Shown here: in pieces, positions 1,744 through 64,000 of the stretch
How the letters are laid out: each line of letters starts with the position of its first letter
Numbering within the stretch: position 1 is the stretch's first letter
Source: Ascoidea asiatica JCM 7603
Lineage: Eukaryota > Fungi > Ascomycota
Length of the DNA: 64,000 nt
Reading direction: 5' to 3'
NCBI GenBank assembly: GCA_001600695.1
Contig: BCKQ01000003.1
Location: forward strand, 1,090,654-1,154,653
Program-made: the position numbers and the translations under genes
Notes under the pieces: model-generated
Seen by the model: the letters and a program-made list of their open reading frames with translations, nothing else
Told to the model about the DNA's origin: nothing
Database searches by the model: none

Positions 1744-2269
1744 AATATTAGTTGTAATATTATGTTTATGGTTAAAATTAGTTCAGAAATTAATAATTGG
1801 TTGTGTATATAATTGGATGATTTATTATATATTCAATATATATTTAATGTATTCTTAATATTAATATATTCTTTATATAGTTTTTAATATAATATATAAA
1901 TATGTATATTTAATATATAAATAAAGGTTTATTATAAAGACTACAAATTACAATAAAATAAGTAAATATATACAATATATATTCGGGGCTTTTTTAAAGA
2001 AAAATTAGCTTAAAATAAGTGTATTTTAGTAGGGATTTTTGATTCTTTTATATTCTAAAAAATAAGTTAAATTGAATAAAGAAAAAAAACATTGGAGATT
2101 TTGCACTGCGTGAAGAATGAGCTAATGCAAACTTTTCTAAAGTGTTCTAAAGTACTGATATTAGTAGAAAGTGTGTCAAATTTAAGTGTATTACTAAATT
2201 ACTAAGATTTTAAGATATTAAGAATTAAAAAATTATCAAAGATATCAAATATTAGATACAGTACTACAT

Positions 2270-2317
2270 AAGATACAAGATACAAGATACAAGATACAAG
2301 ATACAAGATACAAGATA
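2270..2317. repeat. (AAGATAC)x6.8 heptanucleotide tandem repeat
   Basis: Read directly from the sequence. Confidence 0.95.
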
Positions 2318-2386
2318 TTAGTTACTAGTTATTAGGTACAAGAACACTAACAATTAGATATCAAATCTGATATTGATAACCAAGAT

Positions 2387-2437
2387 ACACACCCTCACAC
2401 CCACACACTCTTACACACTCTTACACACCCACACTTA
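2387..2437. promoter_or_regulatory. CA-rich tract with two Rap1-like sites (ACACCCACACAC 2397-2408, ACACCCACAC 2425-2434)
   Basis: Matches the yeast Rap1 consensus ACACCCRYACAY; lies ~650 bp upstream of the Con7-type gene. Confidence 0.4.
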
Positions 2438-2937
2438 CTCTAGCTCCTTAAGGCAGCGCACGCAGCACAGGAAAGCGCATACTACTTTATAAAGTACCAT
2501 AAACACAGGAATCTACGTATTGTGCACATTTTTAAGTTGTGCGCTGCTATAGGCAGCTGCACGCTGTATCCAAAGGCACTCCCGTATCAATTGCTATGAT
2601 ACCATGTTATTATGCTATTATACCATTATGATTTTAATATTTTATGCTATTATGCTATTAAGTTCTTAAGTTATAAATATCTAAAGTTTCTAAATGTGTT
2701 ATGTCATTATGTGAGTTATGCAAATAGTAAATTTGGGAGAGTATGGTTTGGAATGACATTATATTATTGTATGTATTCATATGAGATTTTTGATATGAGA
2801 CTGATAACAAGATTGTCCAAAATACAAATGTGCAATTGAAACTAAGATGGTTTGTTTATCTTCTTGTGTCCTGCACAATCAAGATTAGCTCTCTCTGTAC
2901 AGTACAGCCACTATACTCTGCAGTCTCAGGCATGCGA

Positions 2938-3936
2938 GTACGGCACCTTGTAGTCTGGAATTTAGGGGACTTTAGATACACTTTTAATCACTGAGGGTCA
3001 TTTGCCACAAAAGCGCACATGTTTGCTATGTGGACCAGAGTCCATTTAATTTACAAAATATCGGTACAATTTATTAATAATATAATATAATTTAATATAA
3101 TAGAGGCCAGATTGGCGCACTTTTCTTCAAAGACTCTCCTAATATTGCTTAGATATTTCCCAAATAATTTGATTCTTGGGGTTATTTGGAGATATCAATT
3201 GGGTCTGCAACTAAAATTTGATTGATTTATTGATTAATTGATTGATTGATTGCAATTGTACTGTAGTTAAGTACAATTATAAATATTATTACTGCGTGCA
3301 TTGAGGTTTACCCTACATACGCAATTATAGTGATTCGTATTAATGCTAAATTATTAATTAATTCAATCAGACTAATTTAGCAAATGAGGGTAGCAGAAGT
3401 TTAAAAGCTTGGCTTGATTGTTTTTAATTGGTTGATCTGATTGTTGAAGCTCTAATCATTGTAATAATTTTGAATTATTAATCAATTGAGCTAGTATAAG
3501 GTTAGAGTTTGGTGCTAAAAACTCCACCATCAAACCCTAACCTTATCTATGCTAAGAGGCTTCAAATTTTGTTCAAGCTCTGATTAAAAATAAATTATTG
3601 GAGTATTGCTGTGGTAGCAGAGTACAATTTCTGTACTACATTATCTCTGTGGTATTAATATTAATACTAAAATATCACTCAACCATTTTCATTTTTATTT
3701 TCATTTTTAATTTCATTTTTAATTTTCACATGCTTTAGGCTAACTTTGATCTTAACTTGCACACTTTTCCAACTTGACAAGATAAACACATAACTTGAGG
3801 TTACCCCACTTGTTTCTACATACACCACTTTCTATCATAGCAACTCAGCATTCACTACCATAGTAATACTAATGTTATTATAATTAATATTATTATTATT
3901 ATCAGGCTACAGCCATACAAACATTGCTACTTTTTG
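2938..3936 (+). ncRNA. Candidate ~1 kb structured non-coding RNA (class unknown)
   Basis: No ORF; at least six mutually compatible helices found by eye, closed by a long-range 2948-2957/3903-3912 helix, with mismatches mostly G-U on the + strand. See findings. Confidence 0.4.
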
Positions 3937-9219: not shown

Positions 9220-10269
9220 TTTTATATTTTATATATTATATTTTATATATTGATAAGATATGAAATGATATGAATGTGAATATGAATATATGAGTGAATA
9301 TGGATGAGTTTATATATGAATATTTATATGATTATAATGTATATTTATATGATTATAATGTATATTTATATATGAATGAAGTTCATTAAATATGATTTAC
9401 CTATGTAATTAATTGATTGATTAATTGATTAATTGATTGATGTAATTAATTGATGATTATTGAGAGTTAATATTAATAATGATATTAATATAATTTGGTA
9501 TATTTTTTAGATTAAAAATATTTACGAATAAGAATTGACGGATAATAATATATATATAAAATAAGTTAAAATTTAAGACTTATTATAAATTAGTTGATTA
9601 GATTTGATATAGTTTTAATGGATATTTGAACCAGTGTAAATTAAAAATTACTATTATTATTCTTAATATATTACTCTTAGTGGTATGAGTATTACTATTA
9701 TTTGTATTTTTATTGATATATTGATAATGATAATGATAATGATAATTGATAATAAATAAGAGTAAATAATAGATATAAATAATAAAGGATTAAATTTTCA
9801 AAATCCAAATTTCAATATCGAAAATTTAATAAGTAAATTCCATTACCTGTTAATGATTAATGAAATTTTTTATGATGATAAATTTTTGATATAATTGATA
9901 TTTTATTTGATATTAGATAATTTACTTTTCAACCAGCTGAAAAGTAAGTGAAAAGTAAGTGAAAAGTGACTGAAATAGTATTTTAGTAGTAATAAATGGA
10001 ATATATTAGTGGTAACAGTACTAGTAGCAGTGTTAGTGTTGATGTTTATGCTACATTTACTGCTAAAAAAGAGAGAGATTTTTGCGGCAGCGGTGATAAT
10101 TTTTTTGATTTTTTTATAATGAAAACCCCATGAAAGCGAGAATGCCCTGCTGAATTGGGATGAGTTCAAACAATAAACATAAAAATGTCAAGATTCTTGA
10201 GGCTGGACCTGAGAAAAAGTGAGATTAATTTCCTAAAGAAGTGAAACTTTTCTCAGTTTCGTTTTTTTT

Positions 10270-11045
10270 CAACGATGCAGCACTGGTGGGATGCGGAGTT
10301 AACGGGCATGCAGCAGGCGCAGTTGCCGGTTCGGGTAAGATCCGCATTCCTGAAATGCTTCGTATTTATAATCACTAATTACTAAGACATCTAGGGCTGG
10401 AACTGCTGCATTTTGAACTGGCCCAGGGTAATGGAATGGCTCTGACAGCTTTTCACCCTTGGTTATTCCTGGAAATACACGGGATCTGTCCCGTACTGTC
10501 CCGTGCTGTCCCGTGCTGACCAGAGACTTCTCATATTATCTGCAAAACGAGTGTTTTTATCCCGCGTAGCATCAGCCACTAACATCATTAACGCCACTAT
10601 TGCCACCAATTATACCAAATGAAAACAAACCGAATAAACAAAAAACAAGATCTGCACGTGAGCGGCGAGAATAAAAATCTCAAGCATTGCCTCAAAGGTT
10701 TAATTCGCACCCCATGCTTGTCTCTAAAAGGTATTTGTGGCATATTTCTGTGGCCAATTAAACGATCCCTATTTAACCAATACATTAATGTATTGGCTAT
10801 CAATTAGAAATCAAGAAATGTCAGTTGAATGAGTGTGGTTACGTTAATGAACTGGAACAATGTAAATTCCATATAAATTCAATATAAATTCAATATAAAT
10901 TCAATATATATTCAATATATATTCAATATAAATTCAATTTAAGTTGTATTTCGGCTCAAGTTTTGTTTCCAGATCCAACCAATCAAAGCACTCAACCATT
11001 TTTTTGAAATCAGACATGTTGAGTATATAATTACCACGTGACCTT
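10270..11045. promoter_or_regulatory. GC-richer regulatory island between divergent MRS4 and C2H2 genes
   Basis: CGGGTAA (Reb1-like, ~10333), (CTGTCCCGTR)x3 at ~10486-10515, three GCCAC motifs 10575-10606, CCAAT at 10606/10754/10777 and ATTGG at 10792, CGCACCC at 10706-10712, CACGTG at ~10655 and ~11035. Confidence 0.5.
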
Positions 11046-24192: not shown

Positions 24193-24689
24193 TATGAATA
24201 TATTTGTAATTATGTATTTGTAATTATATTTGAGATTAAATATTTATGTTTATATTTGTTTTTTATATTATTATTATGATGATTGTTATTGTGGTAAAGA
24301 TAAATTAAAGTAAAATTTTAATAAAAAAAAGGAAGCAAATAAAGTATTTATATAAGAAGGATATTGAGGAAACTAATGAAATCAAAAATATAAACAAAGA
24401 GAATATTAAAAGATTATTTTCAAATTAAGCATATCACAATGGCATATTTTATTAAATATGAACTGATTTCAAAACGATTTACAAAAATTATTTTGACTTG
24501 AAATTGAAATTGAAATTAAGTTTGACGAGATAAAAGAGGAAACTGTTAACTTCACTAGTATTTATCAGTATTATTATTACCAGTAATCAGTCTAATGGCA
24601 TAATTAAGTATTGTTTAACGTTATAAATAAAAGTTTGTGAATTTTATTTATGAATAAAAGATATATAAATTGGTGACATTGAAATTAGA

Positions 24690-25560
24690 GTTGGCCAATC
24701 AGCAAGCAGACCGGGCTCAGTTCACTGATCGTTTTGATAAGAAGTTTACCTTTTTGTCCCAAAATCGAAATTTGACATGGGAAGTTTGAAGAAGTGGCAA
24801 GAAGAAGTTTCAGGGAAAAGCGAATGAAGCTCAGAGAAAGCAAGAAATACCTCTCAGACGTTTTCATACTCTCTTTCGTTTGTTCCTTCTTCGTTCATTT
24901 GCCGATTCACAATCGATTTGCAATGTAATTGAAAAAGATCAAGGAGGAAAAGTTGGAGAAAGAAAAGCAAATGGTGTTTTTTGGTGGCAAAGACAGGTCA
25001 TGGCCCAGTCGCTTGAACTTTCTTCCACGACTCAGCAAGAAATCTCCGGACACAAAAACCGAAAAAGTGAGGAATTATTGAATTATTGAATTGTTGAAGC
25101 TGAAGCTGGGACTTTGCAGAGTAAGAGCAATTCATCAGCAATTTCGTGAAGAAATTGAGCTCCGAAGAGATTCGCCACAAAAACGTACGATTTTTTCCAG
25201 GCCGAACCTGCGCAACACAAACAAAAGAACAATTTTCGAAACGCGTAAACACTTAAAACGCGTAAAACGCGTAAAACAACCCCGGGCGGGCTTTGTTGCA
25301 GCAGGACACTTGTAAAGAACTGCAGAATATCACTACCAGATCTATGGAGCCACACTTTCCTCGTATCACTCGGCTAATAATTGCACTCTCGTAAAGGAAC
25401 GAAAGAATGCCACAGTACGCCATGTTGTGCCACAATTTGCTAACAACTTTTCGTTTATTCGTTTCATTACCTCGGGTTATACACAAAATACAATTTTGTT
25501 TGAAGCAATGCACGTGGCACTTGGTCTTGTATTTCGAACCGGATCTGAGTGCAAAAAAAA
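24690..25560. promoter_or_regulatory. Motif-dense divergent promoter island
   Basis: GGTGGCAAA (PACE) 24983-24991; ACGCGT (MCB) x3 at 25241, 25258, 25267; GACACAAAA 25049 and GCCACAAAA 25174 (MSE-like); CACGTG ~25511; CCAAT ~24695. Confidence 0.7.
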
Positions 25561-25758
25561 TAGATATAATTACGTAAGCTCTTATGTCAGCTCTAAACCA
25601 TATTTTAGAAATAATTTAAAAGGAGGCAATATATGAAATACATCATTTTATCACAATTTAAAACAACAACAACAACAACAATAACAACAAAAACTAGGAA
25701 TTGGTAATTGTTATTCTAAGTTAAGTTAACTTTAAATTAATGAATACTGTTTTAAATA

Positions 25759-27156: not shown

Positions 27157-30100
27157 TGTAACTTTGATATTATTTATTATTTATTTACTATCCGATAAAG
27201 ACCATTGGATATAAATCAATCATTATAACATGGTTCGAGAATAACTTTGATAAAATAATTGAATTTTATATGTTTATGCACAATTATTATATGGATTATC
27301 AAAAATTATTAAGAATTATCAAAAATTATTAAGAATTATCAGCGATTATTAAAGTGAAAAAAGAAATTAATTTTGTTATTTGGACCAATGAAATCATTCC
27401 GTTAGAAATAGAATGGTATTGATGTTTGAATATTATTCTATATAAGAGTAAATTTGAATTTAGAATGGAATTAGAGTTAAATTAAATCCAAGCTTTCGGT
27501 TCACAAAGTTGTAGAAGTAAATAAGTTTTCTTTTAACAAATGTTATCCTTGTATCGTTTCCTGGAATCGCAACTTTAACGCGGGTACAGGCACGGCAAAC
27601 GGCTGCAAATCTTGCAGTTTCAAAGTTAGGACATCAAGGTTGCAGGCTAAGTGTAAACTTAAAATGTTTTTGAGTTTATGAACAGATTGCATATTTTTAA
27701 TTAACGTCGTCGACATTTGAGCTCGGCAATTAGTTAAGTTTGATTATTACTCTGGTTCAATTGTAAAAAAGTATTCAAATTGAAATTTAAAATAAATTAA
27801 TTAATGTAAAAGAGTCCTAAATATTCAATTTCATTATTAATTAAAACATTTTTGTTATTTTGGATTTGCGTTAAAACAGGGTGAACTTCTATTTATTTTT
27901 TTTTTTTATTTTCTTTTTATTTTTTTATTTTTCAAATTTGGCTTAAAGTTAATTTGAATTTTTATGCTGATCTGTTATAAGGTGTAAGTTTTATACTAGT
28001 TGGTTAGTTTAATTAAAAATTATATTTACCTTGGATGGAGGGCTCAAAGAATTGTTTTTTATTCAACTAATATTAATTCACGAATTTTTCTTCGGTCATT
28101 ATCTTATTTCAATATGTCATAGAAAGTACTATTGATAAAAAAAAACTTAAATTAAAAAAAGTTTTCTAGATTTATTTCGGGGACTAAATAAAAAAAATGG
28201 CATATTTTTTATCAATGATGAATGGCTTTTTTCTTTTTCCTTTCACTTGGTATGAAAGTAGTATTGTTTTTCTGGTAAATTATTTTTAAATTTAACATCA
28301 CAATGGAAATGTTAGGTTTAATATGAAATTTGATGTTTTATTAACAATGGCAAAATTAACTCAATTACTAATCTCTTTTGATAAAATGTTAACAATCAAT
28401 TTCAATAATAAATTTCAATAATCAATTTCAATAATCTATTAGTTGTTGTGAGACATAGATATGCTGCCTCCTGCATTTTTTAGTGGTTCAAGGAGCTTAC
28501 CACAACATTTTCTGGGATGGAATTAATGTAAACTGACTTCGAATAGGTGTCGAGTAACGTTTTTTAGCGTACACTTGAATAATAATCAAATGAAAATAAA
28601 AATAAAAATAAAAATAAAAATAAAAATAAAAATAACAATGGCAAAGATACAACTAAATGAAATGAAATGAAGTGAATTGAAATTAATCAAAATGAAATAT
28701 CAAATAGGTGGCAAAAAAAAAATATTTTTCTATTGTTTAATTTACATTTCGTAAGTTCACGAATGAAAGGCAGGTATAAAGTCTCGTCGATGAACACATT
28801 ATGCCATTCTCCCCTCTTTTAAGAGATGATTGTCAGTAATTGGATAAAATGAAATTCTGTGTAAATATAATGATATATATCTAACTACTTATATACCTCT
28901 TTATATTATATATTCAGGAATATAAATATATATAATGCAGAAAAACATGGTGATACTTGTAAATTACTATATATTTATATAGTAGAAGTACTAAACAACA
29001 ACCAATATAACTTTCATTATAACATATTTTCAATGCACAATTATTAATTTAATCTTATTGGTACTGTCAAAGAAGAAATGTATACTGTAATACAAATACA
29101 ATTCAACCATAAAAGTGATGTTTGTGTAGTATTTTCAATACTGTAGATGTATATGTTATATTAACAATTACTATTCTTACTATTCGTAATTGAAACTCAC
29201 TAAAAACATGGAAAATTTTGAAAAAAAGCCATGAATTTTGATTGAAATTATACAATATGGAACTAAAATATTATTTTGAATTGGAAGAAATTGATTTTTT
29301 GTATATTGGAATAAAAAGAAGATTGACTAGCAATACTTTTACATTAGTTATAGTACTTGCATCACTATAAGTAAATACTTCTAACCACAAATTTAAAAGT
29401 CGCCTTGGAACTACTGCAAAATATTTCGAGAAAATGAGTTCTTTGCTTGTGAGAAAATTTTTAATTGGTGAAAAAGTTTTAGAATAACATTTCACTAAAA
29501 ATTAGTCATATTCAATACGATACAATAAATCCTATTCTTCGTACAAAACTAAATACAGTACACACAATATAAAATATAAAATATAAAATATAAAAAATAT
29601 TTTCAATGAAATATCCGAAAAAGACATGTTAAATAATGTATGAAAAATACTTACTTTAATATATAACCTTGAAAACAAATCATTAGTGTGCTGAAATGGC
29701 GAGAACTAAATAGAATGAAAAACAAAACTAAAGAGTCAAATTTCAGCTATTTAAAAGTAAAGTACCAATCAAACGAGTGAGCTCTTCATAAGACCAAAAG
29801 AATACTTTTTTCAATCTAAAAGATATTCAAATTTAGTTTTTAAAATAATCTCCAATGGAGTGAATCCTTTTTTTCTACCCTTTAAACTTCTCTGGTTCTG
29901 GTTCTGAGTCTTAGACTAGTCAATCTTTTATAATGCCATTACTCAAGGTTGAAATTCTTGAGAAAAAAACCATTAGCACAAAAACAGAAGCATTATTATT
30001 TGCTATTTGGCAAGAAAGGTCTTTCACTACTTCACATAAATATTTTTATTTAACTGGGAATCTTTTATATGTGCTTGTGCTCTGATAATATATTAATACT

Positions 30101-30601
30101 TACTCTTAATCTTATACCGACAGTGATATAACCTTCGGTATTTTTCATGGATTTAGGTTTCCTGCCTAACAGCAGACGCTTAAAGAAGTAGAACCTAAAA
30201 TCTTATTTGTTTTCAGCCTTAATCTGGAAAAGCTCCAACGTACCAAGACCTTACAGAAATGAGCAGTAGTTAGAAGAAACGTAAAAGATGCGCTGGAAAT
30301 ACACCATTACCTCCAAGACCTGTTCACGTTTTTAACTTTCAAAAGCTTCACCATAAATTCGTACGTGTACCAAATTTCTCTGGTAATTAATAAGTGACTC
30401 CTGATGGTTAAGTTGGTATGTTTTTTTATTTTTTGAAATAGATAGAAGACTATCTAATATCAAAAAGAGACTCAGACATACTGTCTGCAGTCCTGCATCA
30501 GGATGCTGAGTCACACCCTAATTTGGTACTGCTTTACCTCCTCCACAGCGCGTCGATTGCAATTTCTGGGATTCTTTTGCGTTTGCCGTACTCGCAGTTA
30601 C

Positions 30602-30635
30602 AGTTGCGGTTGTAGCCACGGCTACAACCGCAACT
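30602..30635. repeat. Perfect 16-bp inverted repeat with 2-nt spacer
   Basis: AGTTGCGGTTGTAGCC-AC-GGCTACAACCGCAACT. Confidence 0.95.
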
Positions 30636-31634
30636 TCAGCCGCTACCACAACCGCAACCACAACCACTCCCATTCTTTCTCAATTCGATAAAAAGAGAAT
30701 AAACAGATAAAAAACAGATAAAAACAAACAATGAAATGAAAAAAAAAGTGGTATTGTTCCCGAATGGGTTTCTGCCGAGACTTTTTCAAATAAAATAATA
30801 AAAAGATAAAGGAATTTTTAAAATAAGAATCCAATCAGAGAAGAATATAAGCAAATATACTATTAAATATATCAAAGTTTAAAAATTTTTATGGCTCTGG
30901 TTTGTTTGTCAGTCCTTGCTTTATCTTTTTTCTTTTTTTGGGTCCTTGGAGTCTGAGACTTTTTAGTTTGGATTCTATTTCACCTATAAATAATATCTGA
31001 GATTCTGTTGCTTGAGAATCACCACGTCTACTGCCTCTTATCTGTTATCTTAAATATTGGATATAGAATATTGAATATTGAATATTGAATACTTTTTGAT
31101 ATCTGAAAATGTTTTTTGAAATAGCTCCGATTTTATTTGGCTCTATCTAGTTATTGGGCTTGGGTATTGAAATAAACTAAATGTAAACTGGACTATACGA
31201 AAATTAGGAACGTGGAAATATGAGAAAGGGAATTCCTTGAACAGTTGTAAATAATTCAATTGAATCTAATATTTTCTATTTAATTTTTGGTTCTTTTTTA
31301 GTAAATTCACTAAAACTACTGTAAATCATTTGATTTCTTGAAAGTAAAAGAATTCACTCTTTTCTTTTTTGTTAAATTTCTTAATTTTCTTAAGGAAAAA
31401 ATTTAATATAAATTAAACATCTTTTTCATCATTTTGAGTTAAATTTTATTTTTCATTTTTTTAGTTTTTATTTGAAATAAAAAAAAGAAAAAAACGAGAG
31501 TTGTAATAATTTTATTTTATTTAAAAATATAAATTGATTTTTTTTACTTTGGCTCTTTCAATTGATATATAATAAAAAATAATTCAATAAGTAAATTAGT
31601 TATTCTTATACAGTAACAGTAAAGTTAAAAAGAT

Positions 31635-33578: not shown

Positions 33579-34772
33579 CATTTATTCCCATAATTTTTTT
33601 TTCATTTAATTTTCAAATATCAAAATTTTTTATATTACGTTTAGCTAATGTTTTTTTCTCATACTTTTTTTTTTTACTCAAAATCACTATTTACTACTCA
33701 TAACTTGCATTGACATTACTTATTATTTATTTACTTATTTATTTATTTCATTTCTTATATATCACCCAGTATATTATATTATAATACTTTATTCACTCAA
33801 AATGTTTTATAGTATAACTTTTTATATTTTAAAATCACTGAAAAATAATGATTTTTGTAATAAATAAGGATTGTATAACATTTTTAAAGGAGATTATTTC
33901 AAAACATCTAACATTTCCTAATTTGAATATTAATTTGAATGAAATTTGACTGTTTTGACATCAACGTTAGATTTATTTGAACTGTTTAAGTTAACAAATT
34001 AAAAAGATTGAAACGTTAGTTCGATAAAGTTGGTACACAATAACATTAACGTTTTATATTAACGGTAAATTTTATCACATCACAAGGGACTTACGTTAAC
34101 GCAAGTTAAAAGTCCAAACTGAACTTTTTAAGTTTAAAATTATTAAACTAACACTAACGCAATTCACTGTACCTAGAGCATAAAAAAATCAAAGTTTACT
34201 TTACTTCAAAGCAGCATAGTGTACAATAATTTTAATACATCTGTAATTGAATGTAACCATGTGTAAATAAGAAAGTTACCATAGTAACAATCTACCCTGG
34301 TACAATAGACAATAGAATGAAACGTTAAATGATTCGTAGGGTTGGAAATTACTATAAAGAGAATTAATTAAAAAAAAATGGAGAACCTAAAAAGCAATTT
34401 ATGAAAGAAATTAAGATACTAAAAAGGATTTCCCAAGCAACAAATATGCGTAAGTGAAAACACAAAATCCATGGATAAAAATCAGGTTGAACGCCTGTAT
34501 CAAGATAAGAAAGTTTGTTTTCTTCTTTTGTCTTTTTGTTTTGTGGTTCAAAAACAATTCTGGCGTAGTAAAACCAGCTAAATCCAGAGGAAACAAAACA
34601 CAAACCCAGATATTCGAGAAAATAGCAGTTATTGCAGTCCTTTGTGGGTCAATTTGAAAGCAGCACTGTAGGCACAACAAAGGTGTTCAAATTGGTCGAG
34701 AAGGATTCCATTTTAGTTATGGCTACCAATTATAAGCAAAAATACCAACAATAAGAAAATAACTGTCACTCT

Positions 34773-34814
34773 GATAGCAGCTCGGATAGCAGCTCGGATA
34801 GCAGCTCAGATAAT
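34773..34814. repeat. 12-bp tandem repeat (GATAGCAGCTCG)x3.5 giving four phased GATA motifs
   Basis: Units start at 34773, 34785, 34797, 34809. Confidence 0.9.
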
Positions 34815-35187
34815 TTTCTTGGGGCCCAGCCAAGCAGACATGGCAACTGCAAAAAGTGGTGCCATAATCTCCACACGTTTCCAGCCTGGCGAGTGATGCT
34901 TCTTTCTCTTATATTTTCTTCTCTTTTTTTGTAGTGCGTCCTCGGTCGAAGCACGAAACAGTCCAGATACGAGTTGCCTCAAATACGAGCACACGAGCAC
35001 ACGAGCCACAGATGCAAATGCAAATGCAAATGCAATTGCAAATATGCCTGTTTTCCAAAAAAATAAATATTCATTTATCCGATCTCATGCTATATAATAC
35101 GAATGAATACAAACATTAGTGTTGTAAAAAAAAATACCTTTAATATTTTAGTTAATCTCTTTGAAACAGAGAATACTTTTAGAATAT

Positions 35188-36774
35188 TCAATTTAACCAA
35201 CTTTCTGACTCGTTCAATGGAAACTTTTTTGATATAACTTCAAAAACATCTGGAAATGGATTTGTTTTGGAAAGTCGTACTTTTTTGAACTTAGAAAATA
35301 TTACACCTTTTAAGAATCCAGAATCTATTAATGTAACTAAAAGATTTTCAACTAAATTATCATTTATTATTCCTTCATTTCCATTCATATTACTATTATA
35401 TTCATCAGAAGTATCTAATTTGAAAATATAATCACTTTCATTATTGAAAATATTTGAAGAGTATAAATCATTTATAGATAATCTTAATCCAGCTTTAAAA
35501 CTATTATAATCTATAGTAAAAATTTCTGTTTCAAGTTTTTTAATTGAATCTGGATGATTATTATTATTACTATTATTATTAAAATTATTTGAAATTAAAT
35601 TTTTTCTAACTAAAAAGATTCTTTTGAATAATTTTCTAAATATTAAAATTGAACCTTTATTAATTAATAATATTAATGATTTTTTTGATTTGAAATAATT
35701 TTTATTTTCATATAAATGTTTTATAAATAATTTATAATTACCCATTTCTAAAGATAATTGAATATTTTTATAATATTTAATAAATATTTCTAAATTTTCA
35801 TAATTTTTTCTTACATTTTTTTTACCAATTAATAATCCAGTTAAAATTAAATTTTCAAGATTTTTTATAAAAAATTTATTACTAGTAATATTATTATTAT
35901 GATTATGATAATAGTTATTGAAACACCAATAAAAATTTGAATAACTTTTAAAAATTTCATTTTTAATTAAATAATATTTACCTAAATAAAATTTATATAA
36001 AATTTGTTGATATTTTGGAAAAATTTTAAAATTTAATTTATTAATTTGATTTAAATTTATAAAAATATTTTCACAATTTAATGGTTGATTTAATAAAAAA
36101 TAAATTTTACATAATTTTATTGATAAAAATAATAATAATTTTATTTTATTATTTGTTTTTAAAAATGAACCTCTGATATTATTAATTAATTTTAATAAAA
36201 TTATTGGAATTTTATTTAATAATAAATTTTGATTTTTTGAAATAAATTTATCAAATTTTAAAATTATTGGTAAAAAAAATTTTATAAATTCAATTAATAA
36301 TAAATTAATTAAATAACCTTTATTATTATTTTGAAAAAAAATAGATAATGAATTAAAATAATTAAATAAATAATTTATTGAATTTATAATTAAAAATGGA
36401 TTAAAATTTTTAATTAATTTTAAATAATTTTCAATTAAATAATTAAATGAATTAAATTCATTATTAAAAATTTTAAAATTTTCAATAAATTTTATTAAAT
36501 TATCATCTTCATTAATTGATTTATTGATATTATTTTTTAATTCTAAAACTTCTTTTGGTTTTAATAATATATTTATTGAAAGTAATGATAATAATTTTTT
36601 TTGAATTTCAAAATCATTTATTTTTTTATTATTTGATAAATTTGATAAATTTATTAAAAGTTTATTAATTGGATTTGAAATGTTATGAGAATTATTATTA
36701 GATTTAAACTTATTATTATAAGTTAAAGAATTATTATCATTTGAATTGATTTTCCTTTGATTATATGATTTCAT
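35188..36774 (-). CDS. THP1: PCI-domain protein, Thp1/PCID2 (TREX-2) type
   Basis: LCKIYFLLNQPLNCENIF, QQILYKFYLGKYYL, VENLLVTLIDSGFLKGVIF, LSKTNPFP, C-terminal FP..W tail; Csn12-like paralog not fully excluded. Confidence 0.7.
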   Translation of the reverse strand: MKSYNQRKINSNDNNSLTYNNKFKSNNNSHNISNPINKLLINLSNLSNNKKINDFEIQKKLLSLLSINILLKPKEVLELKNNINKSINEDDNLIKFIENFKIFNNEFNSFNYLIENYLKLIKNFNPFLIINSINYLFNYFNSLSIFFQNNNKGYLINLLLIEFIKFFLPIILKFDKFISKNQNLLLNKIPIILLKLINNIRGSFLKTNNKIKLLLFLSIKLCKIYFLLNQPLNCENIFINLNQINKLNFKIFPKYQQILYKFYLGKYYLIKNEIFKSYSNFYWCFNNYYHNHNNNITSNKFFIKNLENLILTGLLIGKKNVRKNYENLEIFIKYYKNIQLSLEMGNYKLFIKHLYENKNYFKSKKSLILLINKGSILIFRKLFKRIFLVRKNLISNNFNNNSNNNNHPDSIKKLETEIFTIDYNSFKAGLRLSINDLYSSNIFNNESDYIFKLDTSDEYNSNMNGNEGIINDNLVENLLVTLIDSGFLKGVIFSKFKKVRLSKTNPFPDVFEVISKKFPLNESESWLN

Positions 36775-58889: not shown

Positions 58890-59927
<1,038 letters not shown>

Positions 59928-60056
59928 TTAAAATAATTGAATTGGATTAGCTACTTACTTACTTTATTACTTCAATTCACTGAATTGAATTGAATTGAAT
60001 TGAATTGAATTGAATTAATTTCGATCCTTAATTTCAATTTCTAAATTTTAAACGAG

Positions 60057-60064: not shown

Positions 60065-62096
60065 GTAAATGAAAACTAGAACCATAAAAGTGGATTCAAA
60101 TTTAGAATTAGATTTAATTTTAATATTAATTTTGATTTTACATTTCATTTGATATTAAAAATAACTTTTTTACTTGATTAACAATAATTTGTTGTTGATG
60201 ATGATAAACAATAAATTGTCCATAAATAAATTGATTAGAGCAAAAAAAAATAACAAAAACAACAAAAATAACAATGGGGGTAAAAAAATAAAGTGATCAA
60301 ATTAGCTTAATGATTGTCGTATTAGTACAATTTGTTCAATCAATAATATGAAACAAGAAGTAAATAATATTGAAAAAAAAAGTATCCGAGTTTATTTTTA
60401 CAAAAAGAAGCATATCTGAACAATTGTTTGAATATAAATATTATTTAAACATGTTTATAATTCTATATTACTAGTGGTAAGCACATTAGTATTTCAAATA
60501 TATTTATTACTTATCAGTTGGTTATTGTTACCCAAAATTAAATGATTTTTTCATTTATTAAGAATTTCAAATAATATATTTAAATACACCGAATCATTTA
60601 CTTCTCAATTTGAATACTTTTTTTTGCATTCTAGAAGATTTAAAAGAGGTAAAAGTATTATCCCAAGTATTTTATTTGTGTTTATGTCTTTGTCTTTGCT
60701 TTCATAGAATGGTTTGCTTTATTGTTTTCATATTTTGATTATTATTTTACTTGTACTAAAACAACAAACAAGTTCGAAAATTATAATAAAGAACAATATA
60801 TTATTACTACTTACTTAACTATCCATTGTATTCTAAACCATTGATTGGCTATTAAAAGACTTTGTGGTTAATTTTCTTATATTCGTTGCAAACTGACCCA
60901 TAAATTATTTTCGGGAATAGGTACGGGTCAGTTTCAAAGAAGTGCGGAACTTTTTTGGAAGGAAGAAATTGCTCGCTTCTTGAGACATGGAACAGTGTAC
61001 TGTTCCATGAACAAATTGTGAATGATTTGGTCTCGGATCTAAATTACAGAAACGCAACGCCGTGGTTGTAGCACATAGAAATTCACTAACCTTGGTAATT
61101 ATTATGCAACACACCACATATTATACCTTGATACACAGACACTGAATTGGACCTGTTAAAAATCAGAATTTTTTAATATTTACGTAGTAACTTAAGCTAA
61201 ACTCAATTAAAAAAAGATGTTAGTGAAATACAGTAAGGTGGTAAATATAATTGGTGAAACCACCTGATTGATATTCCATGGTTCCGGATGTGGAAACCGG
61301 TGTGTTTTGTCCAATAGAAAGTCTACATCTTCGAGTCTAATAAGGTTATTTGTTGTTAGTGCACTCAAAATAATGTACCGCTTTTGTTTACTTTGAAAAG
61401 AGCACAGTGCATAGAATACATATTTAAACTTTGAACTTGCTGCGGTGTGCGTGTAGATTTTCAAAGTAAGCATGTTCGAGTACTTTATTTCATTGTAAAA
61501 AGCGTGTCGGCCAATATATGGTGATCATTAGGAATTGGGGTGTCGACCTTGAAATTCTGTGCAATTAAAAAATGCAAAATGGAGAGGTCAATCTCTAGAA
61601 CACTAGAACAAATAAAAAAAGTGGCAATACTTTTACTAGCACTAGTTCTACCAGCAGGGAACCAGCGAGCGACTGGCGCTCATATAAATAAGTAACCACG
61701 AGAGTAAAAGGAAGAAAAACAAAAGTGAAAGAAAAAGTAAAAGCAAAAAGAAATGGAGAAACAACCAATTCATTGAAATGAATATGGATAATGCATCCCT
61801 TAATGATTAAAAAGGGTTCCAGTTATTTTTAGCATCAAATCGTTTGGCGTTCACCAATTTCTCCCACTTATAGAATTATTGTGCCATTAACGCTACGCCC
61901 AAGTTGTTTGTAAAATCGATACAAACAAGAAGACCTATGCAAAGAGAAATCTATGATTTTTGTACAAAATTCAAAACTCAAATAACAAAACAAAAATCAT
62001 ATCACATACAATATCCCTTTTTGAGACAGGATTATTCCAGTATCTCAACTTGGGGCTATTGGTTCGTATGTAACTGAGTTTGATTTTCTCCCAGAC

Positions 62097-62144
62097 TGGA
62101 GCGGGACACTGCCCGCTCCACTTCCGACTCGAGTCTTCCATGGA
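62097..62144. promoter_or_regulatory. Cluster of GC-rich palindromes upstream of the velvet gene
   Basis: TGGAGCGGG-ACACTG-CCCGCTCCA (contains CGG-N8-CCG), GACTCGAGTC, TCCATGGA. Confidence 0.55.
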
Positions 62145-63400
62145 CTGTGTGCGGACCAAGATTAAACTAACATTTTATTATTTGATTGATTGATTGATTG
62201 ATTTCAAGAAATTCAAGGTGTGGGTTGAAATTGTTCTGTTTTACAAGCTATTTCCCTGGTACTTCCAGATCAGAATCTAAATCAAAATTACTTGAAAATT
62301 CTCAAGTATCAAAACATTCATATCGATATTAGTAATAGTTTTCATTATTGGCATTGAAAGTCTTTGGCCAATTTATTTTTTATTTTCATTTATTATTTGT
62401 TTATTATTTATTTAATTATTATTATTTTTTCAATCTTTTCATTATTCTATAAAACAAATTGAATTTCTTCTTTCTTTTCTAACAATCTTTATTCTCATCT
62501 TCTCATCTTCTCATCTTCTCATCTTCTATTCATTTATTCACTGATCAACTCCAGAATCACAGCCCTCACATCTATAAATTTGCCTACAAATCCACTGCCT
62601 TAGCCTCACTACACCCAGCACTCAGCACTACTATTATTACTATTATTACTACTATTACTACTGTTACTATCTCTATTATTACTTGTACCGCACTGTTTCC
62701 TTAACTAAAACTAAAATTAAAACTAAATCCAAAACTAAAAATCTTAAAGCAAAACTGAAAACTTTACTTTTCTTAGCACTTTCCCACTCTTAACTATTAA
62801 ATATTAATAAAAATCTAGCTTTTGGCTTCTTAAAATCAATCATTATCATAAACTTTTTTTCCCCTAATTGAATTCTGATAAATCATCATAAATTTTAACT
62901 TATTCAATATCATTCCTAAAATCATCTAAATTTTATATCATCTAAATTTTATATCATCTAAATTTTATATCATTTTATTTATAAATATATAATTATTGAT
63001 ATATAATAATCAACTTCTTTCTTATTTCTTGTTTATTATAAATCAAATCAAATTAAATCAAATCAAATTAAATCAAATCAACCAAAATCATATCATATCA
63101 TATCATTTCGTATATTATTCGCATGTTTTCAAATTAGCTATTTTTCTATCATTATTATCATAATCACATTCAAAATCATAATCATAATCATAATCATCTC
63201 TTAATCTTAGTTAATTAATAAACAATATAATCATCTTCATAATTATAATAATCATAATAATAATATTTTGATTAATAATCATACTTATAACAATATTCTA
63301 TATATAATCTTTTAATATTCAAATAATACTCAAACATACTCAAATTTATTCATATACAAATATACTTATATAAAAAATACATATAAAAAAAAAAAAAGAA

Positions 63401-64000
63401 ATGACAAAATATACTAAAGATAAAGTTAAACCAATAAGATCTGATTTTATTTCTTCAATATCTTCAAATTTTAATCTTGAAGTTATTCAACAACCTGAAC
63501 AAGCAAGAGTTTGTGAAAAAACAATAACTGCTGCAAGTAGTAGAAGATTAGTTGATCCTCCTCCAATTGTTAAAGTTTCTTTACTTGATCAAAATAATAA
63601 TGATATAATAACCCAATGTCTTGATGCTTTATTTGTAGTTGCAAGTGTTGAAAGATTATCAGATTCTGATATAAATTTTGACTTAAATTATGATACAAGT
63701 AATGAATTAATTGATGATTTAAATAATAATAATAATAATGATTCAAAAATAATATCTTCTATATCTTCTCCATCTTCAATAAATAATTCTCCGAAAACTA
63801 TTTCAAATAATTCTTTAAAGCCACAAATAGCAAATAAAAGAAAAAGAAAATTAAAAAGAATGAAAGAAATTGAATCAAAAAATTTAACAAGTAGTGATAT
63901 GTTATGTGGTACAACTGTTTTAACTGTTCAATATATTAAAGGTGATCCAAATTTACAAGCTTTAGCTGTATTCACTAATTTATCTGTAAAATATGAAGGT
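63401..64000 (+). CDS. Velvet-domain protein (VeA/VelB/VelC/VosA superfamily), 3' end runs off the window
   Basis: Open for 200 codons from ATG 63401: FNLEVIQQPEQARVC...SRRLVDPPPIVKV...MLCGTTV...AVFTNLSVKYEG, matching velvet motifs QQP-x-x-AR-x-C, RR-x-I/V-DPPPIV and F-x-DLSVR-x-EG. Confidence 0.9.
   Translation, partial: MTKYTKDKVKPIRSDFISSISSNFNLEVIQQPEQARVCEKTITAASSRRLVDPPPIVKVSLLDQNNNDIITQCLDALFVVASVERLSDSDINFDLNYDTSNELIDDLNNNNNNDSKIISSISSPSSINNSPKTISNNSLKPQIANKRKRKLKRMKEIESKNLTSSDMLCGTTVLTVQYIKGDPNLQALAVFTNLSVKYEG

What the first reader, a model, noticed from the sequence alone, without database searches (positions are those of the whole stretch)
63401..64000. Divergent, split velvet-domain gene in a budding-yeast-type genome
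Seen: an ORF absent from the supplied track with all three hallmark velvet motifs, but with substitutions at usually conserved positions (ARxCG to ARVCE, DRRP to SRRL, DLSVR to NLSVK) and a ~75-aa low-complexity insert carrying a basic NLS-like KRKRKLKR between the two halves. It has ~3.5 kb of upstream non-coding DNA. Known: velvet proteins (NF-kB-like fold) control development and secondary metabolism in filamentous fungi and are absent from S. cerevisiae and C. albicans; VelB has an interrupted domain. Inference: this yeast retains a diverged velvet regulator whose DNA-binding loop, partners and targets may differ from the VeA-VelB-LaeA paradigm.
Basis: partly seen in the sequence, partly recalled or inferred. 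Interest (0 to 1): 0.8.

Follow-up and report, generated by a model that had tools for sequence, protein, structure and literature searches.

The report
VeA-type velvet regulator gene in yeast
This is the start of an intact 940-residue gene for a VeA-type "velvet" (NF-kB-like) regulator in a very AT-rich filamentous budding yeast, probably Ascoidea asiatica. It is real but ordinary, because velvet genes and their expansion in this yeast group are already published.

Summary
An ATG at window 63401 opens a frame that runs past the window end for 940 codons without a stop (G000:C3:1154054-1156876).

- **Family:** residues 25-293 match Pfam Velvet at 102 bits against a cut-off of 25. An AlphaFold model of residues 1-310 hits only the VosA, VelB and VeA crystal structures with confidence.
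- **The "split":** the ~76-residue insert sits in the family's known variable region, between the DNA-binding part and the dimerisation part. It is disordered N/S-rich filler plus a basic KRKRKLKRMK patch, and relatives in other yeasts carry a similar patch.
- **Key residues:** the three arginines essential in A. nidulans VelB and the dimerisation glycine are kept. The unusual substitutions fall at positions that tolerated alanine in VelB, or were not tested.
- **Class:** a careful tree puts the gene in a yeast-only clade (Saccharomycopsis, Babjeviella, two paralogues in this genome). That clade is sister to the VeA proteins of filamentous ascomycetes, so the gene is VeA-type, not VelB-type.
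- **Context:** the genome has at least 10 clear velvet genes, including VelB types.
- **Novelty:** a 2024 survey defines Sac-VeA and three other yeast velvet clades. A 12-gene expansion in Saccharomycopsis fibuligera was reported in 2016. This scan has already followed up other velvet genes of this genome, and read this same stretch in another window.

It is a new member of a known kind. Function and expression are untested.

The parts
63401..64000 (+). First 200 codons of a 940-codon ORF. The whole gene is G000:C3:1154054-1156876 = L009:155-2977, which would end at window-equivalent 66223.
   Evidence: Pfam Velvet 102 bits over residues 25-293. N-terminus aligns from Met1 with relatives.
63470..63571 (+). 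DNA-binding region of the velvet domain (residues 24-57, strands 1-2 and loop A). R36, R48 and R49 are kept. E39, S47 and L50 are unusual.
   Evidence: Alignments to VosA, VelB and VeA chains. Column analysis. Model pLDDT 91-97 except in loop A. VelB R71/R80/R81 are essential (PMC13389560).
63653..63880 (+). Expanded part of the variable region (residues 85-160). It is N/S-rich and predicted disordered, at the same loop as the VelB insertion (VelB residues 127-239).
   Evidence: pLDDT 45-57 for residues 100-150. VelB construct boundaries in PMC3876986. Variable region described in PMC12077163.
63836..63865 (+). Basic patch KRKRKLKRMK (residues 146-155), a candidate monopartite nuclear localisation signal. 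8 of 15 surrounding residues are K or R.
   Evidence: A basic patch at the same place in most of the 14 yeast-clade relatives. Function is inferred.
63896..64000 (+). Start of the dimerisation region (alpha-subunit, residues 166-200 inside the window). Includes invariant G170 (= VelB G240) and the NLSVKYEG motif.
   Evidence: Role of G240 from PMC12077163.
59850..63400 (.). 3.55-kb upstream intergenic region, shared with the divergent COQ5-type gene at 58890-59849 (-). It holds a somewhat GC-richer core at 60750-62250 (32-37% GC) and several short tandem repeats.
   Evidence: The island is single-copy in the genome. Similar islands occur in many intergenic regions of the window.

Best explanation
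The gene encodes a VeA-class velvet-domain transcription regulator of the Saccharomycotina VeA lineage, inherited vertically in a filamentous budding yeast.

Shown: an intact 940-aa ORF, an N-terminal velvet domain with the NF-kB-like beta-sandwich fold, conserved DNA-binding arginines and dimerisation glycine, and a place in a yeast clade sister to filamentous-ascomycete VeA.

Inferred mechanism:
- It dimerises through residues ~166-293, with itself or with one of the VelB-type or VeA-type paralogues of the same genome.
- It contacts DNA through loop A (R36, R48, R49).
- It enters the nucleus by the basic patch in the expanded variable loop. The first basic half of the VeA NLS1 position is EQ here instead of KR.
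- It acts on transcription through the acidic stretch just after the domain (20 D/E in residues 297-326) and a 640-residue asparagine-rich disordered tail.

Its targets are unknown. By analogy with velvet proteins elsewhere, they would be developmental genes such as those for hyphal growth or sporulation.
For: - ORF intact and far beyond chance. Sequence confirmed in independent contigs.
- Pfam Velvet 102 bits.
- AF2 model pLDDT 77, pTM 0.70. Foldseek top seven hits are VosA 4n6q, VelB 4n6r_B and VeA 9i2s, probability 1.0, target TM 0.66-0.78. The next hits have E > 0.04.
- PDB sequence ranking: VeA 47 > VosA 37 > VelB 28 bits for the protein, and 111.6 > 96.7 > 89.8 for the clade profile.
- An exhaustive search found 402 relatives. 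The best are yeast proteins at 39-43% identity that align from residue 1. After them come 550-610-aa proteins, of which the named ones are VeA, 'velvet protein' or 'velum formation protein'.
- Careful tree: query with five relatives 99/92, yeast clade 100/98, yeast clade with filamentous-fungus VeA 100/95, VelB-type paralogues outside.
- Residue mapping against mutagenesis in PMC3876986, PMC12077163 and PMC13389560.
- VelB-type partners exist in the genome: C4:457814 scores 151 bits with VelB.
- The basic patch is conserved across the yeast clade.
Against: - No expression data: no RNA run holds the sequence.
- No VosA or VelC reference sequences could be put in the tree. The VeA call therefore rests on named VeA proteins in the sister clade and on the PDB ranking, whose margin is modest.
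- Query-specific changes at nearly invariant sites: G39E puts a negative charge in the DNA-binding loop; also E210T, R253I and L278F, the last at the VelB L331 position.
- VosA K37/K39 equivalents are A45/S47, although VeA itself also differs there.
- The C-terminal 640 aa has no similarity to any relative, so no VeA-like LaeA-binding, NLS2/3 or PEST region can be shown.
- No synteny with the two relatives' loci examined.
- The NLS and activation-domain roles are inference only.
Confidence: 0.75

Rival explanations
1. A VelB-type protein, because its velvet domain is interrupted as in A. nidulans VelB.
For: The insert sits at the same loop as the VelB insertion: query 24-84 aligns to VelB 59-117, and VelB residues 127-239 are the insertion. 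PMC12614781 states that VelB is the only A. nidulans velvet protein with a disordered domain inside the velvet domain.
Against: VelB is the weakest of the three PDB matches, at 28 bits against 47 for VeA. The genome's true VelB types score 151 bits with VelB and form a separate clade at 100/95, while the query lies in the VeA-side clade. Variable-region length is not class-specific across fungi (PMC12077163).
Confidence: 0.04
2. A drifting paralogue that has lost sequence-specific DNA binding and acts only as a dimerisation partner or decoy for other velvet proteins, or does little.
For: A long terminal branch (1.22) and query-specific changes at near-invariant positions. These include a glutamate in loop A (G39E) and loss of the first basic half of the NLS1/loop A region. 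The genome holds many paralogues that could cover the function. No expression evidence.
Against: The three arginines essential in VelB and the dimerisation glycine are kept. VelB G74A, D79A and P82A were not among the severe mutants. The core of the model is confident, with pLDDT above 90 for 133 residues. A 940-codon frame is kept open in 23% GC DNA, where shuffles reach at most 152 codons.
Confidence: 0.15
3. A gene acquired by horizontal transfer from a filamentous fungus rather than retained vertically.
For: Most budding yeasts lack velvet genes (PMC10845976).
Against: The yeast proteins form one clade (Saccharomycopsis, Babjeviella, this genome, with Blastobotrys next to it). That clade is sister to, not nested in, filamentous-fungus VeA, mirroring the species tree. 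Composition is typical of the host: 23% GC and 22% Asn.
Confidence: 0.02

Closest known systems
VeA of Aspergillus nidulans and other Pezizomycotina (velvet domain structure 9I2S; VelB-VeA-LaeA complex)
   Same: N-terminal velvet domain. Best PDB sequence match. Same loop A length (11 residues between the AR and the RR). The RR-x-VDPPP motif. A longer linker inside the dimerisation region, as in VeA. Sister position in the tree.
   Different: - 940 aa against about 570.
- The variable region is about 60-65 residues longer.
- The first basic half of the bipartite NLS1 is missing (EQ for KR).
- A strong basic patch lies in the variable loop instead.
- The C-terminal part has no similarity, so NLS2/3, PEST and LaeA-binding regions are not identifiable.
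- E39, K197, T210 and F278 stand at conserved sites.
Sac-VeA clade of Saccharomycotina velvet proteins (PMC10845976), e.g. Saccharomycopsis crataegensis XP_064850504, XP_064850872 and XP_064850873, and Babjeviella inositovora XP_018984191
   Same: Same starred clade at 100/98. Shared N-terminal extension, IIDHS-type motif, basic patch before the dimerisation region, and SP instead of ST after FPGL.
   Different: Only 29-40% identical. The query belongs to a subclade with five unnamed relatives that share SSRRLVDP and A-x-AVF-x-NLSV (P0001-3, P0005, P0007). One of these comes from assembly GCA_000960405.1. The query's variable region is about 45 residues longer than theirs. I could not check that my clade is the paper's Sac-VeA, because its sequence lists did not name these species.
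VelB of A. nidulans (4N6R chain B) with its intrinsically disordered insertion
   Same: A disordered insertion at the same loop of the velvet domain. The essential arginine cluster and dimerisation glycine are conserved.
   Different: A different clade. VelB is the weakest of the three PDB matches. The insert sequence is unrelated, and it carries a basic patch.
Velvet gene expansion in Saccharomycopsis fibuligera (12 genes; PMC5106798)
   Same: A related yeast lineage with an expanded velvet family. This genome has at least 10 clear plus about 4 borderline Pfam hits.
   Different: That paper only counts Pfam domains and characterises no gene. The species here is different, probably Ascoidea asiatica.

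Membership tests
Velvet domain family (Pfam PF11754) | Profile match above the curated threshold | tested here: met
   102.1 bits against a cut-off of 25, residues 25-293, profile positions 2-235 of 237. The six-frame genome scan gives 106.5 bits at this place.
Velvet domain family (Pfam PF11754) | NF-kB-like beta-sandwich fold as in the VosA, VelB and VeA crystals | tested here: met
   AF2 pLDDT 77, pTM 0.70. Foldseek probability 1.0 to 4n6q, 4n6r and 9i2s (target TM 0.66-0.78). The next hits are STAT and NFAT at E > 0.04.
Velvet domain family (Pfam PF11754) | Essential arginine cluster of the DNA-binding region (VelB R71, R80, R81) | tested here: met
   R36, R48 and R49 align to them. R36 and R49 are invariant and R48 nearly invariant in the 60-row alignment. 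Their role is from PMC13389560.
Velvet domain family (Pfam PF11754) | Dimerisation residues (VelB G240 and L331) | tested here: inconclusive
   G170 is kept and invariant. The L331 position is F278, where A. nidulans VeA has Ile. The residue stays hydrophobic, but the effect is unknown.
Velvet domain family (Pfam PF11754) | DNA binding and homo- or heterodimer formation | not testable with these tools
   Needs EMSA, ChIP or pull-down experiments.
VeA class (Sac-VeA lineage) | Phylogenetic placement with VeA rather than VelB, VosA or VelC | tested here: inconclusive
   The yeast clade is sister to named filamentous-fungus VeA at 100/95, and VelB types lie outside. PDB ranking is VeA > VosA > VelB. 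No VosA or VelC reference sequences were available for the tree.
VeA class (Sac-VeA lineage) | Velvet domain at the N-terminus followed by a long C-terminal region | tested here: met
   Domain at residues 25-293 of 940.
VeA class (Sac-VeA lineage) | Bipartite NLS1 overlapping loop A (A. nidulans VeA residues 28-45) | tested here: not met
   The first basic pair is EQ (residues 33-34) instead of KR. Only K40 and R48/R49 remain.
VeA class (Sac-VeA lineage) | C-terminal region that binds LaeA, with NLS2/NLS3 and PEST | tested here: not met
   Residues 301-940 show no similarity to any of 163 relatives. A functional equivalent cannot be excluded.
VeA class (Sac-VeA lineage) | A LaeA-type methyltransferase partner in the genome | not tested
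   No specific profile or reference sequence was at hand. A 2026 review states that laeA is absent from Saccharomycotina (PMC13006574).
VelB class | Closest similarity to and clade with VelB | tested here: not met
   28 bits to VelB, against 151 bits for the genome's true VelB type. Separate clade.

The most novel reading that the evidence does not exclude
In the Ascoidea lineage the VeA branch split into subtypes. This single-copy subtype moved its nuclear import signal into an expanded disordered loop inside the velvet domain. It also changed the charge of the DNA-binding loop (G39E), giving it a new DNA specificity or partner choice within a greatly enlarged velvet network that controls filamentous development in a budding yeast without LaeA.
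Probability: 0.12. Interest if true: 0.5.

Novelty: new member of a known kind. Interest (0 to 1): 0.25.

Why it matters
Reviews still say that velvet regulators are absent from budding yeasts (for example PMC13006574, 2026). Each well-documented yeast member helps correct that view. Ascoidea and Saccharomycopsis are filamentous yeasts with enlarged velvet families. They could show how an NF-kB-like developmental regulator family works without the LaeA and secondary-metabolism context of moulds.

This particular gene adds one more uncharacterised family member with an ordinary architecture. Its value is as a candidate for deletion and binding studies, not as a new kind of system.

Tried and rejected
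1. The word-index protein search with residues 1-310 of the full protein gave nothing: 7852 candidates, none scored. The low-complexity words probably swamped the candidates. The exhaustive search then found 402 relatives.
2. Synteny as support for orthology. The neighbours here are Med1, COQ5, a nucleoside transporter, LicD and GWT1. The neighbours of P0005 and P0002 are GCS, Uso1, Syja_N, a GATase/IGPS (TRP3-type) gene and Med5. Nothing is shared.
3. The GC-richer island upstream (60750-62250) as a possible hidden RNA or repeat. It has no Rfam or tRNA hit and is single-copy. Such islands occur in many intergenic regions of the window, so it is not specific to this gene.
4. Expression. No RNA run holds the sequence.
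5. Strain variation for a selection test. Contigs of the three DNA runs are identical over the covered parts. The many joints reported are low-complexity repeat artefacts.
6. Conserved motifs in the C-terminal 640 residues. None were found.
7. The organism behind assembly GCA_000960405.1 (JXWR01), which carries a close relative, could not be named from the paper library.
8. Supplementary files of the 2024 velvet survey do not mention Ascoidea or Saccharomycopsis by name.
9. VelB-type, horizontal-transfer and pseudogene readings were rejected, as set out under the rival explanations.

Full report
**Observation**

The window is G000:C3:1090654-1154653 of a 20,313,720-base assembly in 71 contigs. 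An ATG at window 63401 opens a frame that leaves the window. On the extended locus it runs for 940 codons to a stop at L009:2977, which is C3:1154054-1156876.

The DNA is 23% G+C. The longest open frame in 500 shuffles of the same bases was 152 codons, and the two other frames hold 78 and 209 stops. The frame is therefore actively maintained. Contigs from three public DNA runs reproduce L009:1-2075 without a single difference, and one run also covers 2147-3100.

- The motifs ARVCE, SRRL and NLSVK are present.
- An insert spans about residues 85-160.
- KRKRKLKRMK lies at residues 146-155.
- The 3.55 kb upstream have no ORF over 88 aa, no tRNA and no Rfam match.

**Is it a velvet domain?**

Yes.
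- Pfam Velvet matches residues 25-293 at 102 bits, against a cut-off of 25.
- By sequence the protein finds only three kinds of solved chains: VeA (47 bits), VosA (37) and VelB (28).
- An AlphaFold2 model of residues 1-310, built on a 60-row alignment, has pLDDT 77 and pTM 0.70, with 133 residues above 90.
- Its seven confident Foldseek hits are exactly the VosA, VelB and VeA crystal structures (probability 1.0, target TM 0.66-0.78). STAT and NFAT follow at E > 0.04.

**What the "split" is**

The published architecture of velvet domains, from 4,999 proteins, has these parts (PMC12077163):
[quoted passage not shown] - a ~100-residue dimerisation region, made of two subunits joined by a linker.

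In this protein the parts map as follows:

| Part | Residues |
|---|---|
| DNA-binding region | ~24-57 |
| Variable region | ~58-165 |
| Alpha-subunit | ~166-211 |
| Linker | ~212-249 |
| Beta-subunit | ~250-293 |

It lies at the same loop as the 99-residue insertion of A. nidulans VelB: query 24-84 aligns to VelB 59-117, and the VelB construct without the loop joins residues 126 and 240. The model gives it pLDDT 45-57, which means disorder.

The five nearest relatives have a variable region about 45 residues shorter. The extra length here is N/S-rich filler of the kind this AT-rich genome produces everywhere. Paralogues go further:
- In the C8 gene the two halves are 163 residues apart.
- In the C1 VelB-type gene they are over 420 residues apart.

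**Are the functional residues intact?**

Alanine scanning of A. nidulans VelB found R71, R80 and R81 essential in the DNA-binding region. The mutants G74A, D79A and P82A were made too and were not among the severe ones (PMC13389560).

| VelB residue | Mutant effect in VelB | Query residue | State in query |
|---|---|---|---|
| R71, R80, R81 | essential | R36, R48, R49 | kept |
| G74, D79, P82 | not among the severe | E39, S47, L50 | changed |
| G240 (dimerisation) | critical | G170 | kept |
| L331 (dimerisation) | critical | F278 | changed; VeA has Ile here |

S47 and L50 are shared with the five nearest relatives. E39, T210 and I253 are peculiar to this protein, as is F278. K197 is shared with two relatives.

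VosA K37/K39 align with A45/S47. The loop here has the VeA length, and VeA also differs from VosA there.

**Which class?**

An exhaustive HMMER search of 1.84 billion representatives found 402 relatives and none closer than about 43% identity.
- The best six are 394-675-aa proteins, five of which align from the first residues. The named ones are Saccharomycopsis crataegensis velvet-domain proteins.
- Babjeviella inositovora and Blastobotrys adeninivorans follow.
- Next come 550-610-aa proteins with an N-terminal domain. Where named, they are 'VeA protein', 'velvet protein' or 'velum formation protein'.

A careful IQ-TREE of 45 domains, rooted on the genome's VelB-type paralogues, gives these supports:
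- query with P0001, P0002, P0003, P0005 and P0007: 99/92;
- a 15-row yeast clade, including the two paralogues C4:558954 and C8:407300: 100/98;
- yeast clade plus Blastobotrys with filamentous-ascomycete VeA: 100/95.

This mirrors the species tree, so vertical descent of a VeA lineage is the simplest reading. It presumably corresponds to the 'Sac-VeA' clade of PMC10845976.

The clade profile ranks PDB chains VeA 111.6 > VosA 96.7 > VelB 89.8 bits.

Caveat: I had no usable VosA or VelC reference sequences, so the tree excludes VelB but does not formally exclude those two.

**Genomic context**

A Pfam scan of the genome finds 10 clear velvet genes and about four borderline ones.
- Three, including this one, fit the yeast-VeA profile strongly.
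- Six of those placed in the tree are VelB-type. One of them scores 151 bits with VelB.

Potential dimer partners are therefore present. Neighbours of this gene are a divergent COQ5-type methyltransferase and Med1 upstream, and a nucleoside transporter downstream. Synteny with two relatives' loci is absent.

The upstream gap holds a 1.5-kb core of 32-37% G+C that is single-copy. Such islands occur in many intergenic regions of the window, where non-coding DNA is on average richer in G+C than coding DNA. It is a genome-wide trait, not a mark of this gene.

**Organism**

The assembly size and contig count (20.3 Mb, 71) equal those listed for Ascoidea asiatica JCM 7603 in PMC5499181. The nearest named relatives are Saccharomycopsis, a related yeast genus by my own knowledge. 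This agrees with earlier notes of this scan. I did not verify the species by a marker gene.

**Mechanism (inferred)**

- The protein is a dimeric, loop-A-mediated DNA binder of the VeA type.
- The VeA NLS1 position (A. nidulans residues 28-45; PMC12169562) has lost its first basic pair here (EQ).
- A strong basic patch sits in the variable loop just before the dimerisation region. Most of the 14 yeast-clade relatives carry one at the same place. It is the likeliest import signal.
- Directly after the domain come 20 acidic residues in 30 (residues 297-326). A 27% asparagine tail follows, without similarity to anything. I read these as an activation or scaffolding part.
- Only two CTG codons occur, both outside the domain, so the ambiguous CUG decoding known in Ascoidea does not matter here (the decoding is my own knowledge).
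- No RNA data exist for the organism in the runs served.

**Novelty**

- A 12-gene velvet expansion in Saccharomycopsis fibuligera was reported in 2016 (PMC5106798).
- The variable region inside velvet domains was described in 2025 (PMC12077163).
- I found no functional study of any velvet gene in this yeast group.
- Earlier follow-ups of this scan had already reported the family expansion in this same genome, and this same stretch was also read in another window.

The gene is therefore a sound, intact new member of a known kind.

Noticed in passing
window 1-64000 (e.g. 10000-10900, 24500-25700, 30000-31000, 34300-35200, 60700-62400): Non-coding DNA is on average richer in G+C (26.4%) than coding DNA (22.0%). 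Many intergenic regions hold a 0.5-1.5 kb island of 32-46% G+C. That is the reverse of the usual pattern and may mark promoters.
   Followed up: partly
G000:C1:656573-658801 (L031:1544-3871) and G000:C8:407279-408547 (L029:1768-3993): Paralogous velvet genes whose two domain halves are separated by very long low-complexity variable regions: over 420 residues in the VelB-type C1 gene and about 163 in the VeA-type C8 gene.
   Followed up: partly
alignment A3 (yeast VeA clade), columns ~347-370; window 63836-63865: A basic patch (QKQRKSR, FKKRKP, KHKRPK, KLRKRKKR, KSRKQKRRR, KRKRKLKR) just before the dimerisation region. It is conserved across the yeast VeA clade and absent from the filamentous-fungus VeA consensus.
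   Followed up: partly
literature: A 2026 review (PMC13006574) still states that velvet proteins are absent from Saccharomycotina. This contradicts PMC5106798 (2016), PMC10845976 (2024) and this genome.
   Followed up: yes
window 59975-60015, 62495-62530, 62920-62975, 63040-63100: Short tandem repeats in the upstream gap: (TGAAT)n, (CATCTTCT)n, three copies of a 16-mer ATCATCTAAATTTTAT, and (AAATC/AAATT)n.
   Followed up: no
G000:C4:419639-559868: Four velvet genes (three VelB-type and one VeA-type) lie within about 140 kb on contig C4, a loose cluster.
   Followed up: no
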